A stretch of DNA of 62,978 bases, filler included, from Hyphochytrium catenoides (taxonomy: Eukaryota > Protista > Hyphochytriomycota): NCBI GenBank assembly GCA_900088475.1. It is 9 parts of 9 records of this genome, joined end to end, with 100 filler letters (N's around TTAATTAATTAA, not from the genome) between each part and the next. Parts side by side here need not be neighbours in the genome. Positions count along the whole stretch, not along the records: positions 33,731 to 41,839 come from FLMG01000244.1; 8 more parts are not named here. One strand, written 5' to 3'. The notes beneath the pieces were generated by a model. That model ran no database searches. It was not told where the DNA came from and saw only the letters and a list, made by a program, of their open reading frames with translations. The number at the start of each line of letters is the position of its first letter. Within the stretch, counting starts at the first letter, position 1. The position numbers and the translations under genes were made by a program. Below are positions 33,477 through 41,839 of the stretch, piece by piece.

Positions 33477-35550
33477 TGCTCTTCTTCTCGCTCGTGTTCT
33501 TCGCGCTGAACACCGAGAAGAGGGAAGAAACGGGATAAGAGAGAGTGTGTTTGTGGTGCAGATAGCGTTCTATTATGTGGTTTGTTTCCCGGGATTGGCG
33601 GTTTTGAAAATGATGATGACAACCCTAGTGNNNNNNNNNNNNNNNNNNNNNNNNNNNNNNNNNNNNNNNNNNNNTTAATTAATTAANNNNNNNNNNNNNN
33701 NNNNNNNNNNNNNNNNNNNNNNNNNNNNNNGACAGAGCACCTTCTCTCTCTCTCACTCTCTTGAGATCTGCTTCAGTCTCTCCTCTTGAGATCTACTGCA
33801 TCAGATTCTCATACTACACGCCGAGTATGAGGAGGAAGAAGACGTCGTAGAGCCATAGTTAACAGCAGGTAATAAGAATAAGCTGGTCCCCAACAAAGCC
33901 TAGCAATGCCTGCAAGAAAATGAAGAAGATTTGCTCTAGCAATGCCTGCAAGAAGCCGTTCACATAAAAATGAAGAAGATTTGCCCAGCCGCAGAAGAAG
34001 AAGAACGACGACGCCCCCAGAAGAAGACCAGCGGAGGAGAAAGTAGTTCAGTCCGCCTAGTAGAGCACCCAGCATGCCTCACACGTCACCTTTGCTTTTT
34101 TGATATCATAAGAAGGGTCTGGGTAATAAGGTAACTTCTTGTACTTAACAAGAAAGTTGTTCTTCCTCCTCTGGATTCATGTCCTGGTGCTATTAGTAGT
34201 AGAAGCGCCGACCAACATTTACAAAGAAGAGGGATAGAGCGGTGTTACTCCACTATCAGTAATAGCAGGGCGGGGACCACCACCACCTACATATTATTTA
34301 TAAAGAACTGGATGGAGGAGTCTCTAGTCGGTACCCGGAAGAAGGGACAGAAGAGGTTCTTTATGATGACTACTATTGTCGGACCACCACCCAGGACGGG
34401 AGCCAAGTAATAAGCAAAGCATGGATGATGATGGCCGCCGCGCGCCCTACTTCCTCTGCATTATTATTAGTTAGTTTGCTGCTGTGTAGATGAATAATGA
34501 TGAAGGCGGTGGCGGCGATCGGCACCACGAACCCCACAGCCTACTGCCAATGATGGCGGTGATGTCGCTTTTTTGTGTAGTGATGATGATAGCGTCCGTG
34601 GTTCTCACTCTATCTATTCGTTTTCAGTTCTTTCCATCACGATGATGATCATGCTCCTGCATCAAGCCGCTGTAAGTACTAGTAATTAATAATCGAAGGA
34701 ACTCCTGTTCTTCTGTAGAACTAAAAGCCTGCAGCCCGCCGTCCTTGTCCGAATATGTCCGGAAGTGGTGTTGGCTGAGGATGGCCGTTAGCGGTAGGAA
34801 ATGTGTTTTCCACCCTTCATCAGAACTTTCAAACACGAACGCAGAGACTGCACTGGAGGCGCAGCAGCAGCAGCAGCAGGCTGTTCGTTCTGATGATGAT
34901 GACAGGCCCCAATGAATGATGATGGTGGCAGAGAGGAGAGGTTTCTTTACCAACTGCACGAGGCAGGGTCAGTGACCGTCTTCTTGATTTGGAGCTCCCA
35001 CATGCTTCTTCTTTCTTCCTGGTCGACATTCCCACCGTCCCCGCTGCGCAGGCCTGGTGTCAAACCCCTGGGTGGTGGCCTTACTGGAGTGTAGACTCAT
35101 TGAGGGATCAGAAGCCAACTCTAATTGCCGCCCCTGCTCTAGAGGGAAGGTGATCATATATAGAGATGATAGTGCTTTCATGATGTCTATTGACGTAGTG
35201 TTGCTTTCCTGTCACACCCAGACGGTAGATGTGTGTGCGTAAAGAAGCGTTGGCTTAGCATGCCAGGGCGTAGGTTGTGGAAGGGGGGAAAGAGATTGCT
35301 GATGCAACGTCCTTTGCTGGTGCATCGTTGTCCGCGAGGACTTTAATGGAGGACGCGCAGTGCAACCCTGAATCAAGCTACAAGTGCTGTTGCCACAGAC
35401 AGTGAGCTGAAACAAAGAAGGTGCAGAACCGCTTAAGAGTGGTTCTCTCCGGTCTCAACGGAGATCTACAACTCTTGTTCTGCTCTCCTTAAAAAAGCAG
35501 CGCTTGACTGGCCTCCCTATCCATAACTCCGAAGGTTTCTATTATTGAGG

Positions 35551-38500
35551 ATGGCAGGGAAGGGCCCCCTAGCGGCGCCATTATCCCGTCGTCTTCGGTT
35601 CATGTTATCCTCGCTGAGAGGACCAACGTTGTGGGCCTGTAGGAGAACGTTGAGGGCTCCATCGTTTTCGCTTCTGAGCGTCCGGGGCACCTCTAGAGCC
35701 TTCTTCTCACCTTCTCTACAGTGCCCCAAGGCTCCTGCGGGTATCTCCGTCAACTCTGCAGAAGATAATGCCACAGGGACTAAGGCAGCGAAGAGCACTA
35801 TGGGGCCGGTATGACAATGATTCTGGGGTAAAGTGTGTATATGACAATCTGACCTGCATCTTTGAAGAGTGCGCGCCAGAAGCTCGAGAAGCTTGTCAGG
35901 GCGATCAAGCGGTACAAAGAGCTTTATGGTGACGTCAATCCTCCTTTTAGGTTTACCATTCCCACAGATGAGGGAGCGGAAGCCTGGCCAGAAGATCTCC
36001 GTGGCATGAAGCTCGGCCGTCGGATCTCTAATGTGAGGTGAGATGGCAGAGCCAATTTCTCCCAACTTTTGCATACAGCAAAGCTTACCGAGCTTGGTCC
36101 AAGGGTTCGTGGATGCTTCTCAAAAAATCCGGAGGCAGTGCAAGCCTTAAGAGACCTGGGCGTCACTTGGATTGACACGGAGTTTCTCGAGACCAATCAT
36201 GACCTGATAGTAGAGGCAGTGCAGACTTATGTCAAGCTCTATGGACAAGCGTTCGTGCTGAAAAACTTCACGGTTCCATCTGCTGAAGAGGAAGGCGGTA
36301 AGAAAGGGAAGTGGCAAAGAATATCGTTAGAAAAGAGCTTGTGTACAGTGAAAGAAGGTCAATATGTGAATGTACCGATACTTCGACATCTATTATAATG
36401 GCTGAAGGAGGTAGCCAAGGAGCCTCTTCTGGGACCAGGGCGGCAACCTCTACCTTTCCCTAGTCCGCCTAACGCCGTCTTACTTCTAGCATCCTTGTGG
36501 CCCAAGCATCTTCGCGGAATGAAGCTAGGTGCTATACTGCGGAAGTATCGCTACATTCAGCATCTTGTGCCGCAGGAGCGACGAAAACAGTTAGAAGAGC
36601 TAGGCTTTGACTGGGATCAAGCAGGGGGTCATACCCTGACCAGAATTCTTCCAGCCTTCGCCAGATATAGAGAGCTATACGGCACGAATAAGGTTGGCCA
36701 GCATCGGTGTTGATGGGGTCCCGGGGTGGGCCTCTTGCCTCTCAGGCCCCTCCCTTTCTTGTTACATTTCGTTGATTCCCCGTCTATCTTTTATACCTAT
36801 CAGGTGCCACGAGACTTTGTTGTTCCAAATGATCATACCCGATGGCCTATGGTCAGAACACATGGATTGGACTTAGGCGAAAAGATCTACCAAATTCGAA
36901 ACAATTTGAAGTATGTCAGGCAGTTTCCGACTTTCGTGCTTAAGCTCCATGACGCGGGACTCACATGGGATCGGGAGCCCGAGGACTGTGGCGGGGAAGA
37001 GGATGACCTAGAGACGGAGGAAAGTGTTTGGGAGACCTCTTCGGGAGCTCGACCTGGGGAAGCCCCATTCTCCATAGAAGACTTGAAAGCCGTTCTTGTC
37101 CTTCATAGGCGGCGGTATGGAGATACTACTATTGACCTCAATTTTGTCGTGCCACCTCCTGAACCCGACTACCGTTGGCCAGCCCATCTAACTGGCTTTC
37201 CGCTGGGCCGTCGATTGAAGAGCACACGTTTCGGCCGTGCTGCAATGGTAGAACTATTGCGCAATCACATAGATTTCGCCAGAGATTTGGGTTTTGCTTG
37301 GATCCAACCTAAAGTGAAGCCGATCCCTAGTAGGGAGCAGCAGTATGAGGCTTTAGCGATGTTTAAGCAGCGCCACGGTCATCTAATGGTTCCAAAGGGC
37401 TTCATCATCCCATACAACGCTGACTATCCCCCACATCTACATGGCTTGAACCTTGGCAACGCTGTGCGGCTTCTGCGGCGATCGCGATCGGCCTTGCCGC
37501 CTTCGCTTGCGAAGCAGCTAGACGCTTTGGGCTTTCAGTGGGACGGGACAGACATAGCACAAGGAGAGGTGACAAATCGCTTATTTGATAAGTTTTTAAG
37601 GGCGCTGAAGGAATATCAGTCAGTTCATGGTAGGACCGAGAGGCCCTTGCGTTGTGATACGAATCTGTCGTCTCGCTTTTTGTTCGTTGCTCTCCAAGCA
37701 CATTTAAACCCTCAGTACCCTGACATTCCTTGCACGACCGCATCTCTCTTTCCCTCTCTTTTCTTGTCGTCGTCAACGGACACTAACACTAGGAGACGAA
37801 ACTCAAACTTTCCCTCTTTAAAAAACATTCTTTCTGGGCAGGTCATCTCAACATTCCGGTAACATACGTGGTCCCCGCCACAGCAGATTTCTCTCCGTAC
37901 TTTCACGGCTATTATCTAGGACTCTCTTTCAAGTTTGCCCGGAGAGGCTCTCGCTTCACCGGGCCATCAGAGAGACGCCGCTTGATTGCCGAGTTTGGCT
38001 CAGTGTTTGAGGATGACTACGAGATGTTTTTCTCAGCATTGAAGGAGTACAAGGCAGCATTCGGTACGTGAAGTACATATCGCCAAAGAAAGCTACATGT
38101 TAGTCCATTGCTGGGGTACAACGAGGATCGAGCAGGAAGAGGGAAGGGTGTATGTGACACATCAGAACTTGATAATGGAGGTCGGTAGATAGAGCTGTTC
38201 AATCTCATGATGGAGGCGGCGTTCTCAAAGGCTTACTCTCCTCCCTTACTCAGGCAACTTGGAGATCCCACCTGACTTCGTGATTCCGGAGGGAAGCAGC
38301 AGCTTTTCCCAACATCTCCACGGCTATACGCTTGGCAATGCGCTCGCGTTGGTAATGGATGGTAGAAGGTCTTACTCTTCCCATAGGCGCAATGAGATAA
38401 GGGCTTTAGGACTGGATCTCCCTCCTTCACGGCGTAGCGAAGGACCTTCTGAGCGGCCCCACTTCAAGCGGTTTGTTAAGGCGCTGACAGAGTTCAAGCA

Positions 38501-39415
38501 GACTCATGGTTGGTGTTAGTCGGCGGATTTGCCGACATCCTTTACCCTTCTTTCTTCCGAATTCTCTAATATCTCTATCCCCGTATTATTAGCTTACAGG
38601 CTTTGCCATTGCACCTTGACTACCATATCAGAGAAACTATTTAGTATTAGCTCGCATGCATCTCAAACCTTTCTGGTGTAACTTCCTAGTACTTCATCCT
38701 CTATTCTGTCTGATTTCTGACTCGGCACGATTGACCGTAGGCCACGTCGAAGTTCCGCCGCGATATCTGGTACCTGAAAACACCTCTTTCTCGGTAGACT
38801 TGCATGGTATGAAGCTTGGCGCCATAGCTGCTTTGGCTCGGCAAGGTCTGGCCTTTAGGAACCAGTCAGAACGTGCGCTGCTAGCCGAGCTTGGTTTTTA
38901 TACCTCAAACAAGTTCCGCACACGCTTCGAAGTTTTCTTGACTGCGATGTCGGAGTACAAAGCACTATACGGTAAGACAGCAGCCGCATAACCCTATGAA
39001 TCGTTTATAATTTCCGGGAAACATCTAGGTCTCTACCTCCGCCAAGTCATCTCTATTGGCGTATAGAAGAGCGCCTACGCCTACTATCCGTGTTGTTACT
39101 ATCAGCTACATGTTTGGCTCACTTTAGAGTCACTGCGCTCACTGTCTAATGCCTTACTTATCTACGCCGCCGTTCTTCACCTGTCTTTCAGGTCACCTAA
39201 ACATTCCTCATTTCTACGTCATCCCGGAGGATCCTCGGTTCTCGAAAGAGTTGCATGCGTACGAGCTTGGGGAGGTAGTTCGACAAGTCAGACGAGGAAG
39301 TAACTTCAGCCAGCCATACGAGAGACTGCAGTTAGCCATGATCGGCTTCTCTGCAGATGAGACGTCCACTGAAGTTGAGGAACCAGCGAACGGACCAGTA
39401 AACACGCAATCGTGA
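35551..39415 (+). CDS. Helicase-associated (HA) domain repeat protein, nine repeats, multi-exon, with putative mitochondrial transit peptide
   Basis: Repeat consensus AL..YK..(Y/H)G.L.(V/I)P..F.(V/I)P.....(W/F)P..L.G..LG......R.........L..LGF.W seen nine times across exons; Arg/Ser/Leu-rich N-terminus lacking acidic residues. Confidence 0.85.
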
Positions 39416-39829
39416 CGTTAGGGGACAATACTAAGCACAAGAGTTATCAGTACGACGTCCATGGGACCTTAAGTTCGCTCATCTGCTCCACGTGAAGTGC
39501 TCTTACATACCATCGCTCAACTTTTTAACCCAAGAGGTAGACCTAAGCTTCAAATCAGTTCAAAAATAGGGGCAAAGATCATACCAGAGCATGATGAAAG
39601 AGAATCCATAGCATCGCCAAATGAGTAGCCTAAGAACCGAACTTCTTGAATTTGAGTTGTAAGCTTTTGACTAGGCTAATAGAGCTTGGATGCTCACTAC
39701 ACACTGATGCGTGACGCCAAGCCTAGGGTTATGCGCTTGTAGCGCCTTACTCGGGAAAGGATAAGAAGCCTGTGTGCTTGGAGGAAGAACGCGCGCCTCT
39801 ACTCATCACAACTGCCAGAGAAAGCTGAA

Positions 39830-41839
39830 TTATTTTCGGGATTTTTCAATGGCTCTTGAAGCCGCCCCAAGCCCTTTGCCAGCTCCTTTCTTCAATGCTG
39901 TCGGCTGGAGAAGACAACGTGAGTGGACAATCAAGGAAGAAGATGACTTGGCAAGACGCCATTTTATTGCCAACTTTGAAGAAGCAGAACTGTAGACAAG
40001 AGCAGTTCGCGGTATGAGAGGGGCTGAACTACAAAGAAGGCGAAACTGTCTGGACTGAGGAAGCTGTACGACAAAGATAGAGAATGAGTCCAAGCGCAAG
40101 CTACATACCCTAGCCTTAATGTCAGCACACTTGGGAATGTGCCGCTCCGCTGCCTTCTCGTTAAACCTTCGGCCACAATTAGGGCAAAGGATAAGGGATG
40201 GATCCGGCGCCGAGGGGACAGGCGGTGGAAGTTCTCTGCGGAGGACAAGGGGAGACTGAGCAAGACCTCGAAGTCAAAGGCATTTGATTAAGGAGCAAAT
40301 GGAGCTGTTAAAAGCAGCGAAGACGGACGTCAAGGAAGGGCTCCCGTGCAGTATCTTCAGTAGTAGGCAGGCACCTCCTCTCTTCTAACATCACTCACCT
40401 TCCTTCCTTTAGCGCTTGTGTCACCTCTTTGCTACCTTTCAACATATTTCGGAAAGCGCTGGACTGTTCCTTCCAGCTGGAAGATTTCTTTTCAACTACA
40501 GACGGGAGTTTCGAAGATAAGAGTTAAGGCAGATAAAGTGGATGTATCAGTGGAAATTGAAGCTACGAGGAAAGGGACAAGCTCGCCAATGACAGAATGC
40601 AGTAGCGGTGTAAATGTGAGCATCCCTGTAGAGCTAATGCTGAGGCTGGAACAGATAATGGCCATAAAAGAGAGCCACGGAGACAAAGAGCGAGACAGCG
40701 CACTAAAAAGATTGAAAGCCAACAAGAAGTCTAGCCTTTCACTTAGACAATCATACTTTTCTGACTATCAGCTCCGGCCTTCTTCTTAGCTCCCCCAGCC
40801 GAGGCCTTCGGTGGCGCCACTGGATTCCCGTTCTCGTCCTTCAGTTCACCTAAGCGTTTATCCTAGGAACACCACTTCTCAGTTACCCTACAGATCTGAC
40901 TTGATGCAATCTTCCCCTATGCTGCGATTCTGTTCTTCCCGAACCATTCACATCATGCCCTCGTACGACTATCGGGCCGTTCCCTTCGTCCATCTTTCTC
41001 TTTCTTATCCTTTCGTCTAAGCTGCATGATCCTTACCGACATATCAATGGGCTTTCTCTTAGATAGGAAGACCTTCTTGCAAACTTTCTACGTTGAGGAT
41101 AATTAGGAGTTCAGTTCGATGTGGCTTATAGTGCAATGTATGACTGCTATTAGCTAGGGGAGAGCTCACTTCACAACTAAGAGGATGAACTGAGAACGAG
41201 AAAAGACAGAAACGGCAGACATCAGCTCGATAAGTTCAGATAAGGCAGCGAGCTGGTAAGGAGTTACTGAGAGTGCGTGTCAAGACTAGAAAGCCCATCA
41301 AAGAGTAGCCAGGAGGTATGTAGTGAGACTCGCAACCGCGTCCGTCTTACCTCATGCTTAGCGAAGACGTCTTCTTTGAAAGAACGACCACAGTCAGGGC
41401 ACTGAACGGTAGGCCCTATATCCTCGTATTCACCCTTATTGAGAGCAAGTGGGGGGGGGAGGGGGATGGTTAGCAAAACAATGGAATTGAAGCTGCTACG
41501 GTGGGATGGACTCTAGATCGGACTTTCTCAATATGCTGAAGAGCATCAACAGGTAGAATGGCCTAAAGTACTCCACTTGCTTTGGAGCTACCGAAGGTCA
41601 AATGCACCACCTAAAAAAGCAAGTAAAGAGAGATGAAGCGAAGGACACGCGAGAGATATAACGAAAGGCGAAGGCTGAATGGAGAGACGAGACGATCCGC
41701 TATAATATGATATTCTTTGGAAGCTCAATGGGGAACAAGTCAAAGCACCATAATTAGGGCGAGGGTGACTTGCCTCTTGTGGCTCAGCAAACTGTGCAGC
41801 ATGGGGTGGCACGGGCTGGCTCAGCGCAGCCTCCGCAGA
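39830..41839 (-). CDS. ZC2HC1-like C2HC zinc-finger protein, 5' end lost in the gap
   Basis: Exons give CPDCGRSFKEDVFAKHE-KVCKKVF, SWKEQSSAFRNML, DPSLILCPNCGRRFNEKAAERHIPKC and last exon PTALKKGAGKG...KSRK stop. Confidence 0.85.

What the first reader, a model, noticed from the sequence alone, without database searches (positions are those of the whole stretch)
35551..39415. Nine-repeat HA-domain protein with a mitochondrial-type presequence: candidate modular organellar nucleic-acid binder
Nine repeats of about 70 aa keep fixed structural residues but vary in the helix after LG (RRISNVR, AILRKYR, EKIYQIR, RRLKSTR, NAVRLLR, LSFKFAR, NALALVM, AIAALAR, EVVRQVR). There is no helicase or other catalytic domain. 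HA domains are predicted nucleic-acid-binding helical modules. The N-terminus is Arg/Ser/Leu-rich and acid-free. Inference: a PPR/OPR-like, code-bearing repeat system for organellar RNA or DNA.
Basis: partly seen in the sequence, partly recalled or inferred. Interest (0 to 1): 0.7.

Follow-up and report, generated by a model that had tools for sequence, protein, structure and literature searches.

The report
Nine-repeat HA-domain protein with presequence
This is a real nine-exon nuclear gene, under protein-level purifying selection, for a protein made of a mitochondrial-looking leader and nine "helicase-associated" (HA) three-helix domains; it belongs to a large, uncharacterised family of HA arrays whose members often carry organelle-type leaders, but a PPR-like recognition code is not supported.

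Summary
On the + strand, from ATG 35551 to the stop at 39415, a nine-exon, eight-intron model encodes about 860 aa. It has an 86-aa leader followed by nine HA (Pfam PF03457) repeats with a period of about 77 aa, and no other domain. Every exon from 2 to 9 hits the expected part of an independent HA profile (21-61 bits; best of 900 shuffles 7.2). Allelic variants in three genomic runs favour introns threefold over exons per base. In exons, 10 of 13 are synonymous. So the frames are right and the gene is constrained. No RNA data were found.

The leader has no acidic residue for 70 aa, net charge +11 and no signal-peptide core. Among 218 relatives, 24% have such N-termini, against 2.8% of internal control windows. 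A single repeat folds confidently and best matches 2KTA, the bacterial HA domain reported to bind DNA.

Organellar nucleic-acid binding is plausible. However, HA is an autonomous 75-aa domain, not a PPR/OPR hairpin. The geometry between repeats is not predicted with confidence, and no code is shown. Verdict: a new member of a known, functionally uncharacterised family, with a testable hypothesis for the whole family.

The parts
35551..35808 (+). Exon 1: 86-aa leader. It is Arg/Ser/Leu-rich, has no D/E for 70 aa and has no hydrophobic signal-peptide core. The ATG has A at -3 and G at +4.
35809..35867 (+). Intron 1 (59 nt, GT..AG, phase 0). It is needed because the frame of repeat 1 has no upstream ATG.
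   Evidence: one SNP
35868..36173 (+). HA repeat 1 (exon 2 and the start of exon 3), interrupted by intron 2 (36038-36103, 66 nt). Intron 2 removes an in-frame TGA. An alternative 60-nt intron, 36033-36092, fits as well.
   Evidence: seven SNPs of run X2 fall inside intron 2
36201..36620 (+). HA repeat 2 (end of exon 3 and exon 4), interrupted by intron 3 (36298-36489, 192 nt, phase 1).
36639..36971 (+). HA repeat 3 (end of exon 4 and start of exon 5), interrupted by intron 4 (36693-36803, 111 nt, phase 0).
36972..37073 (+). Acidic linker of about 35 aa between repeats 3 and 4 (net charge -11, pLDDT below 50). It is a likely hinge that splits the array into 3 + 6 repeats.
37074..37301 (+). HA repeat 4 (entirely within exon 5).
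   Evidence: 30.9 bits
37335..37547 (+). HA repeat 5 (entirely within exon 5). It is the repeat closest to the family consensus. It passes the Pfam HA threshold and was folded alone.
   Evidence: (61.3 bits)
37587..38011 (+). HA repeat 6, interrupted by intron 5 (37630-37841, 212 nt, phase 1, inside the Gly codon of the HG motif).
38021..38414 (+). HA repeat 7, interrupted by intron 6 (38064-38253, 190 nt, phase 1, same position in the repeat).
38463..38907 (+). HA repeat 8, interrupted by intron 7 (38509-38740, 232 nt, phase 1, same position in the repeat).
38923..39358 (+). HA repeat 9, interrupted by intron 8 (38972-39191, 220 nt, phase 1, same position in the repeat).
39359..39415 (+). Short acidic C-terminal tail and the stop codon (39413-39415).

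Best explanation
This is a functional nuclear gene of an intron-containing eukaryote whose nearest HA relatives are in stramenopiles. It encodes a protein of about 860 aa with a cleavable mitochondrial-type presequence followed by nine autonomous HA three-helix domains, arranged 3 + 6 around an acidic hinge. Shown: the gene structure, the nine HA domains, purifying selection on the protein, the presequence-like composition, and the HA fold. Inferred: the protein is imported into the mitochondrion. There the mostly abutting, mildly basic HA domains each contact nucleic acid through the surface formed by helix 2, the loop and helix 3. DNA is the more likely ligand, by analogy with the bacterial HA domain, but RNA is not excluded. 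The array would then bind an extended organellar target, as a genome-maintenance or gene-expression factor. It would work like an array of independent small DNA-binding domains (Myb, zinc-finger or mTERF style) rather than like a PPR solenoid.
For: Gene and selection: the profile hits on exons are complementary and in register. There are 20 SNPs in 1282 nt of intron against 13 in 2583 nt of exon. Of the exonic ones, 10 are synonymous and 3 are not. The indels seen in both deeper runs lie only in introns. Family: Pfam HA scores 44.1 bits, and all 100 language-model neighbours are HA clusters. Fold: the single-repeat model has pLDDT 90 and pTM 0.78. Its best PDB match is 2KTA, at Z 5.7 and 2.8 A over 62 residues, with TM 0.50/0.52. 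Ligand: HA domains are described as 'previously shown to bind DNA' (PMC12191111). Bacterial HA domains are fused to SF2 helicases, PLD nucleases, Mrr and RepA. Targeting: the leader has 70 acid-free residues, net charge +11 and a maximum 12-residue hydropathy of 0.92. Among relatives, 53 of 218 N-termini pass a crude presequence test, against 60 of 2181 internal Met windows. Presequence-like leaders recur across oomycete genera, and oomycetes have no plastid. Functional surface: HMM positions 46-64 are 0.30-0.65 identical between orthologues but only 0.03-0.31 identical between repeats, in 19 five-repeat orthologues.
Against: There is no RNA evidence for the model, for the 5' exon or for expression. 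No trained targeting predictor was available, and my presequence test is crude. Its control is internal windows of the same proteins, not other proteomes. The organism is unknown, so a primary-plastid transit peptide cannot be excluded. DNA binding is documented for one bacterial domain only, and I could not read that paper. Many HA-repeat relatives lack such leaders, and some are fused to AP2, CCT or UBA domains, which points to nuclear roles for part of the family. The repeats are only mildly basic (net +2 to +7), and two exons are acidic.
Confidence: 0.45

Rival explanations
1. The protein is the same, but it acts in the nucleus or cytosol as a chromatin- or DNA-binding, transcription-factor-like HA array. 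On this reading the Arg-rich N-terminus is not an import signal, or exon 1 is mis-modelled.
For: Some eukaryotic HA arrays are fused to AP2 (P0059), CCT (P0015) and UBA (P0058) domains. About half of the relatives have N-termini classed as 'other'. The 5' end has no RNA support.
Against: Seventy consecutive acid-free residues with net +11, directly after a well-placed ATG, are hard to explain otherwise. The frame of repeat 1 has no ATG of its own, so an upstream exon is required. Presequence-like leaders are ninefold enriched in the family.
Confidence: 0.27
2. This is the reader's reading in full: a PPR/OPR/TALE-like solenoid in which one or two residues of the helix after LG in each repeat specify one base of an organellar RNA or DNA. 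That would be a true recognition code.
For: Helix 2 varies between repeats in this protein. In oomycete orthologues it is conserved for each repeat. Most neighbouring repeats abut with almost no linker.
Against: The unit is a 75-aa domain that folds on its own, as shown by 2KTA, which was solved as a single domain. There are no PPR, OPR or TPR hits. The three-repeat model has pTM 0.49, and other HA arrays superpose at only TM 0.32-0.42 and about 6 A. The repeat-specific positions span some 20 residues plus parts of helix 1, not one or two code positions.
Confidence: 0.1
3. The HA array is a protein-protein scaffold, for example a subunit of a mitoribosome or another complex, and does not bind nucleic acid directly.
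For: Surfaces that are repeat-specific yet conserved between orthologues fit any specific partner. The net charge is weak. Below 2KTA, the weak structural matches (Z 3.3-4.2) include helical mitoribosomal proteins.
Against: Those Z-scores are within the noise for helical domains, as the tool's own note says. Bacterial HA domains are always found in nucleic-acid enzymes. DNA binding is reported for 2KTA.
Confidence: 0.12
4. It is a decaying pseudogene, or a chance string of ORFs, and is not a functional gene.
For: There is no RNA evidence. The reading frame is broken eight times in the genomic sequence.
Against: All eight breaks are bridged by GT..AG introns that restore the profile register. 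Ten of 13 exonic SNPs are synonymous, and SNP density in introns is three times higher. The two exonic indels appear only in low-depth run X3, in contigs of depth 6.2 and 3.9.
Confidence: 0.03

Closest known systems
HA domain of Bacteroides vulgatus putative helicase BVU_0683 (PDB 2KTA; Pfam PF03457)
   Same: The fold and motifs agree. Repeat 5 modelled alone aligns to 2KTA at Z 5.7 and 2.8 A over 62 residues with 26% identity. The profile of eukaryotic repeats finds 2KTA by sequence at E 0.012. The domain is reported to bind DNA.
   Different: The bacterial domain sits in one or a few copies at the C-terminus of an SF2 helicase. Here there are nine copies, no helicase, a targeting-type leader and a eukaryotic intron-bearing gene. 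The bacterial 'LGxW..QR' is replaced by 'LGxx[hydrophobic]xx[hydrophobic]R'.
Stramenopile 'helicase-associated domain-containing proteins', which are HA-only tandem arrays (for example oomycete P0001-P0031, Saprolegnia SPRG_08966, Chaetoceros CTEN210_18467)
   Same: The architecture is the same: 4-16 abutting HA repeats, no catalytic domain, and often a presequence-like N-terminus. None of them has a tested function.
   Different: Identity is only 28-42%, and no close orthologue (50% identity or more) exists among 1.84 billion cluster representatives. This gene has nine repeats, an acidic hinge, eight introns and a distinct 'FS for WP' subtype in repeats 6-9.
PPR / OPR / HPR organellar alpha-solenoid RNA-binding proteins
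   Same: Both are nuclear-encoded tandem helical repeats with an organelle-type leader and repeat-to-repeat variation on exposed helix positions. Both families are lineage-expanded.
   Different: The repeat here is about 77 aa with three helices and a long structured loop. It is not a 35-40-aa hairpin, and it is an autonomous domain. No solenoid is confidently predicted. There is no Pfam PPR/OPR hit, no known code, and the ligand is more likely DNA.
Arrays of small independent DNA-binding domains (Myb/SANT repeats, mTERF, C2H2 zinc-finger arrays)
   Same: This is how I think the protein works: each small helical domain makes its own contacts, and the array sums them over an extended site. Weak structural matches to a Myb domain (8ynu, Z 3.5) and to the Sap1 DNA-binding domain (6ext, Z 3.1) appear.
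   Different: There is no sequence relationship. The structural matches are at noise level. This is a functional analogy only.

Membership tests
Pfam HA (PF03457, helicase-associated domain) | Match to the Pfam HMM above the gathering score | tested here: met
   Exon 5 scores 44.1 bits against a cut-off of 28.4. Exons 2 and 4 give sub-threshold hits because introns split the domains.
Pfam HA (PF03457, helicase-associated domain) | Conserved motif pattern: helix 1 (L..AL..[YF]....G), then [VI]P..[FY].[VI]P, then [WFY][PS], then G..LG...[hydrophobic]...R, then L..[LF]G[FLV].[WFD] | tested here: met
   All nine repeats align in register to an independent family profile at 21-61 bits. Shuffled exons score 7.2 bits at most.
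Pfam HA (PF03457, helicase-associated domain) | Three-helix fold of the solved HA domain (2KTA) | tested here: met
   The single-repeat model has pLDDT 90.2. 2KTA is the top match of 48,161 chains at Z 5.7 and rmsd 2.8 A over 62 residues, and the next match is at Z 4.2. Foldseek gives TM 0.50/0.52.
Pfam HA (PF03457, helicase-associated domain) | Association with an SF2 helicase core (the origin of the family name; not required in eukaryotic members) | tested here: not met
   No helicase or other domain occurs in the gene or within the 8.1-kb piece. The same holds for most stramenopile relatives.
Pfam HA (PF03457, helicase-associated domain) | DNA binding | not testable with these tools
   There is only the literature statement for the bacterial domain (PMC12191111 citing Mills 2013). 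The primary paper is not held.
PPR/OPR/HPR alpha-solenoid organellar RNA binders | Helix-turn-helix repeat of 35-40 aa, recognised by PPR/OPR/TPR-type profiles | tested here: not met
   The period is about 77 aa, with three helices plus a loop of about 25 residues. Pfam finds HA only.
PPR/OPR/HPR alpha-solenoid organellar RNA binders | Repeats stack into one continuous superhelix | tested here: inconclusive
   The three-repeat model has pLDDT 80 but pTM 0.49. Other predicted HA arrays superpose at TM 0.42 or less. Coordinates and PAE could not be inspected. Short linkers leave a semi-rigid array possible.
PPR/OPR/HPR alpha-solenoid organellar RNA binders | Defined code positions that specify bases | tested here: inconclusive
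   Residues that are repeat-specific yet conserved between orthologues exist, but they spread over HMM positions 46-64, 74-78 and parts of helix 1. No targets are known.
Mitochondrial presequence proteins | N-terminal stretch that is acid-free, Arg-rich and potentially amphipathic, without a hydrophobic signal core | tested here: met
   The first D/E is at residue 71. There are 9 R and 2 K in the first 60 residues. The maximum 11-residue hydrophobic moment is 0.59, and the maximum 12-residue Kyte-Doolittle mean is 0.92.
Mitochondrial presequence proteins | Positive call by a trained predictor, or experimental import and cleavage | not testable with these tools
   TargetP, MitoFates, HECTAR and ASAFind are not available here, and there are no localisation data.

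The most novel reading that the evidence does not exclude
HA tandem arrays may be a lineage-expanded family of organelle-targeted, modular nucleic-acid-binding proteins in stramenopiles and other protists. That would make them the functional counterpart of PPR, OPR, HPR and mTERF proteins in lineages where organellar trans-acting factors are largely unknown. Mitochondrial members would carry presequences, like this gene and many oomycete proteins. Plastid members would carry a signal peptide followed by an aromatic residue. Each repeat's surface formed by helix 2, the loop and helix 3 would give it its own specificity.
Probability: 0.3. Interest if true: 0.75.

Novelty: new member of a known kind. 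Interest (0 to 1): 0.42.

Why it matters
In plants and green algae (PPR, OPR, mTERF) and in apicomplexans (HPR, RAP), the proteins that control organellar genomes belong to expanded helical-repeat families. A 2026 survey of alpha-solenoid organellar factors still names diatoms as unexplored (PMC13126933). HA-only arrays are numerous: 1,665 clusters at 50% identity match this one exon. They are annotated only as 'helicase-associated domain-containing protein', and I found no functional study of them. If many are imported into mitochondria or plastids and bind DNA or RNA through repeat-specific surfaces, they would be a missing class of organellar regulators and a possible new programmable scaffold. 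This gene on its own is one more family member. Its value is as a clean example: nine repeats, a clear leader, and evidence of selection.

Tried and rejected
- **RNA support:** The look-up of sequencing runs returned only genomic DNA holders and no RNA run. Read laying showed no splice joints, so the introns rest on sequence logic and variant patterns.
- **Word search with exon 5:** this gave a single relative. The tool's length window hides longer proteins.
- **Exhaustive search:** this gave no hit above 42% identity. Neither the protein's own entry nor a close orthologue is in the collection, and the organism stays unidentified.
- **Foldseek against the PDB:** nothing was significant for the three-repeat model or the single-repeat model. 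Only the exhaustive aligner put 2KTA clearly on top.
- **PDB sequence search with exon 5:** this gave nothing. A profile was needed to reach 2KTA.
- **DNA-level repeats:** none were found, so the array is old and is not a recent tandem duplication or a low-complexity artefact.
- **Literature:** the Mills 2013 paper and the supplements of the diatom organelle proteome are not held.
- **Mitoribosomal matches:** I considered reading the helical-protein matches (Z about 4) as a lead and rejected them as noise level.
- **Upstream signal-peptide exon:** two short hydrophobic ORFs lie about 1 kb upstream (34266-34490 and 34490-34642). That distance is far beyond any intron length in this gene, and they have no Pfam support.
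- There is therefore no whole-length search, fold or targeting run.
Full report
**Scope.** Only places 33731-41839 of the window are genome, and all work was confined to that range. I therefore never joined the exons into one protein for any tool or script, and every search used window references to single exons.

**1. The observation**

Six-frame reading shows no long ORF. It shows a chain of open stretches on the + strand that each carry HA-like motifs. Eight GT..AG introns join them. The exons are:

| Exon | Coordinates |
|---|---|
| 1 | 35551-35808 |
| 2 | 35868-36037 |
| 3 | 36104-36297 |
| 4 | 36490-36692 |
| 5 | 36804-37629 |
| 6 | 37842-38063 |
| 7 | 38254-38508 |
| 8 | 38741-38971 |
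| 9 | 39192-39415 |

- The total is 2583 nt, or 860 codons plus the stop.
- The introns are 59, 66, 192, 111, 212, 190, 232 and 220 nt long. Their G+C is 47%, against 52% in the exons.
- Intron 2 removes an in-frame TGA. A 60-nt alternative (36033-36092) fits equally well.

*Are the repeats more than chance?*

- Pfam finds HA (PF03457) above its threshold on exon 5 (44.1 against 28.4 bits) and weakly on exons 2 and 4. Introns split most repeats, which explains the weak hits.
- I therefore built a profile from 54 single repeats of relatives, leaving out the window's own sequence.
- Every exon from 2 to 9 hits this profile at 21-61 bits, and each hits the part of the profile the model predicts. 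For example, exon 6 matches profile positions 20-76 and then 5-16 of the next repeat.
- The best of 900 shuffled exons scores 7.2 bits.
- This gives nine repeats in register with a period of about 77 aa.
- No other Pfam domain is present in the gene, upstream, or downstream before the neighbouring gene.
- There is no repeat at the DNA level, so the array is old.

*Is it a live gene?*

- No RNA run holds the locus. The three holders are genomic DNA and show no splice joints.
- Their allelic differences are still informative. Of the listed variants inside the gene, 20 lie in 1282 nt of intron and 13 in 2583 nt of exon.
- Of the 13 exonic variants, 10 are synonymous in the predicted frames and 3 are conservative or mild changes.
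- The indels seen in both deeper runs lie only in predicted introns. Two exonic indels appear only in the low-depth run X3, in contigs of depth 6.2 and 3.9.
- This argues that the frames are right and that the protein is under purifying selection.

**2. What it is**

*The leader.*

- Exon 1 (86 aa) has no Asp or Glu for its first 70 residues.
- It has 9 Arg and 2 Lys in the first 60 residues, plus many Ser and Leu.
- Its amphipathic stretches reach a hydrophobic moment of 0.59.
- No stretch is hydrophobic enough for a signal peptide; the maximum 12-residue hydropathy is 0.92.
- The ATG has A at -3 and G at +4, and a stop closes the frame eight codons upstream.
- The frame of repeat 1 has no ATG of its own, so an upstream coding exon is required.

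*The domain.*

- Repeat 5 folded with 54 relatives gives a confident model with pLDDT 90 and pTM 0.78. It consists of helix 1, a loop of about 25 residues with a small beta bridge, helix 2 (the 'helix after LG'), and helix 3.
- Of 48,161 PDB representatives, the best match is 2KTA, the NMR structure of the HA domain of a Bacteroides vulgatus putative helicase. The match is Z 5.7 and 2.8 A over 62 residues at 26% identity. The next match is at Z 4.2.
- The family profile also finds 2KTA by sequence at E 0.012.
- A recent paper refers to HA domains as 'previously shown to bind DNA', citing the 2KTA paper. I could not read the primary paper.

*The family.*

- The exhaustive search finds 1,665 clusters at E up to 0.001, 624 at E up to 1e-10 and 79 at E up to 1e-30. 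None is above 42% identity. The protein itself and any close orthologue are therefore absent from the collection.
- Named relatives are HA-only arrays of oomycetes (Saprolegnia, Achlya, Aphanomyces, Phytophthora, Pythium and Globisporangium) and of diatoms (Chaetoceros, Epithemia). Bacterial relatives are SF2 helicases with C-terminal HA domains.
- All of the eukaryotic relatives are annotated only as hypothetical or 'helicase-associated domain-containing' proteins.
- The organism of the window could not be named.

*Array anatomy.*

- Most neighbouring repeats abut with 0-5 linker residues.
- A disordered, acidic stretch of about 35 residues (net charge -11) separates repeats 3 and 4.
- Repeats 6-9 are 35-38% identical to each other and 18-34% identical to repeats 1-4.
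- Repeats 6-9 share 'FS' in place of 'WP'. Each carries a phase-1 intron inside the Gly codon of the HG motif.
- Exons 6, 7 and 8 are symmetric, at 222, 255 and 231 nt. That half of the array probably grew by exon duplication long ago.

**3. How it most likely works**

*Targeting.* The character of the leader is shared across the family. By a crude test (no D/E, at least 3 K/R and at least 2 R in the first 25 residues), 53 of 218 relatives pass. Only 60 of 2181 internal windows starting at Met pass. Clear examples recur across oomycete genera, which have mitochondria but no plastid. Another 17 relatives start with a signal-peptide-like core. In about 10 of these, a Phe, Tyr or Leu follows a small-residue site, which resembles the diatom plastid signal as I know it. 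They are environmental sequences without taxonomy, so this is only a lead.

*Binding surface.* In 19 five-repeat oomycete orthologues I compared identity between orthologues at the same repeat with identity between repeats of one protein. Positions 46-64 of the profile cover helix 2, the loop and the start of helix 3. They score 0.30-0.65 between orthologues and 0.03-0.31 between repeats. The long loop at positions 31-43, apart from its invariant WP and G core positions, is poorly conserved in both comparisons. Each repeat therefore has its own constrained surface there. That fits repeat-specific recognition, but it does not identify the ligand.

*Array geometry.* The three-repeat model has good local confidence (pLDDT 80) but pTM 0.49. 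The nearest predicted HA arrays in the ESM Atlas superpose at only TM 0.32-0.42. The tools therefore do not show a fixed solenoid.

*My commitment.* The protein is imported into the mitochondrion and binds organellar DNA, less likely RNA, as an array of independent small domains. I give the whole chain 0.45. Separately, I give nucleic-acid binding about 0.65 and organellar localisation about 0.55. The rivals are:

- a nuclear or cytosolic DNA-binding role (0.27);
- a protein scaffold (0.12);
- a true PPR-like code (0.10);
- a pseudogene (0.03).

**4. Comparison with what is known**

Membership of Pfam HA is met on sequence, motifs and fold. The helicase association that gave the family its name is absent, as it is in most eukaryotic members. 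Membership of the PPR/OPR/HPR class fails on repeat length, on repeat type and on the profiles. The analogy is at most functional.

**5. Novelty**

The gene is a new member of a known but functionally uncharacterised family. I found no paper on eukaryotic HA arrays or their localisation. The family-wide enrichment of organelle-type leaders and the repeat-specific conserved surface are therefore, as far as I can tell, undescribed and testable.

**6. Verdict**

The organellar nucleic-acid binder reading is plausible, but the PPR-like code is not supported.
- Interest is 0.42.
- The most novel reading not excluded is that HA arrays are a protist counterpart of PPR/OPR/mTERF factors. I give it probability 0.3 and interest 0.75 if true.

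Noticed in passing
window 39833-41512, - strand: The neighbouring gene, convergent with the HA gene, has at least two exons that each carry a zf-C2HC_2 zinc finger (PF13913, 32.9 and 29.9 bits). It looks like a ZC2HC1-like protein.
   Followed up: partly
window 37630-39191 (introns 5-8) and exons 6-8: Four successive repeats carry a phase-1 intron at the identical codon, the Gly of the HG motif. Exons 6-8 are symmetric (222, 255 and 231 nt). Repeats 6-9 form a subtype that is 35-38% identical to each other and has 'FS' for 'WP'. This is a signature of ancient growth of the array by exon duplication.
   Followed up: yes
window 36046-36084: Seven SNPs within 39 nt occur in run X2 only, all inside predicted intron 2. 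This is a locally divergent haplotype.
   Followed up: partly
window 39785-39819: Contigs of all three DNA runs skip 33 nt here (AG..AG ends, 4 nt of ambiguity). The place is downstream of the stop codon. It is an indel difference between the window's assembly and the runs, in the 3' UTR or intergenic space.
   Followed up: no
relatives P0060, P0204, P0205, P0211, P0221, P0164, P0159, P0136, P0208, P0062: These HA-array proteins begin with a signal-peptide-like core that is followed by Phe, Tyr or Leu after a small-residue site. This resembles the bipartite plastid signal of diatoms. Most are environmental sequences without taxonomy.
   Followed up: partly
relatives P0059, P0015, P0058, P0055: Some eukaryotic HA arrays are fused to AP2, CCT, UBA or ribosomal L7Ae domains. 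Part of the family probably works in the nucleus or cytosol.
   Followed up: no
L001:1-6971 and P0033: In the oomycete-like contig, the HA gene lies next to a BK/Slo-type ion-channel gene on the opposite strand. P0033 of Pythium insidiosum is annotated as one protein with both channel and HA domains, which is probably a merged gene model of the same neighbourhood.
   Followed up: no
window 34430-34480, 34540-34620 and 34850-34900: Upstream of the gene there are two short hydrophobic ORFs, a CAG-repeat run and GATGAT-type low-complexity runs. There is no Pfam hit and the coding status is unknown.
   Followed up: partly
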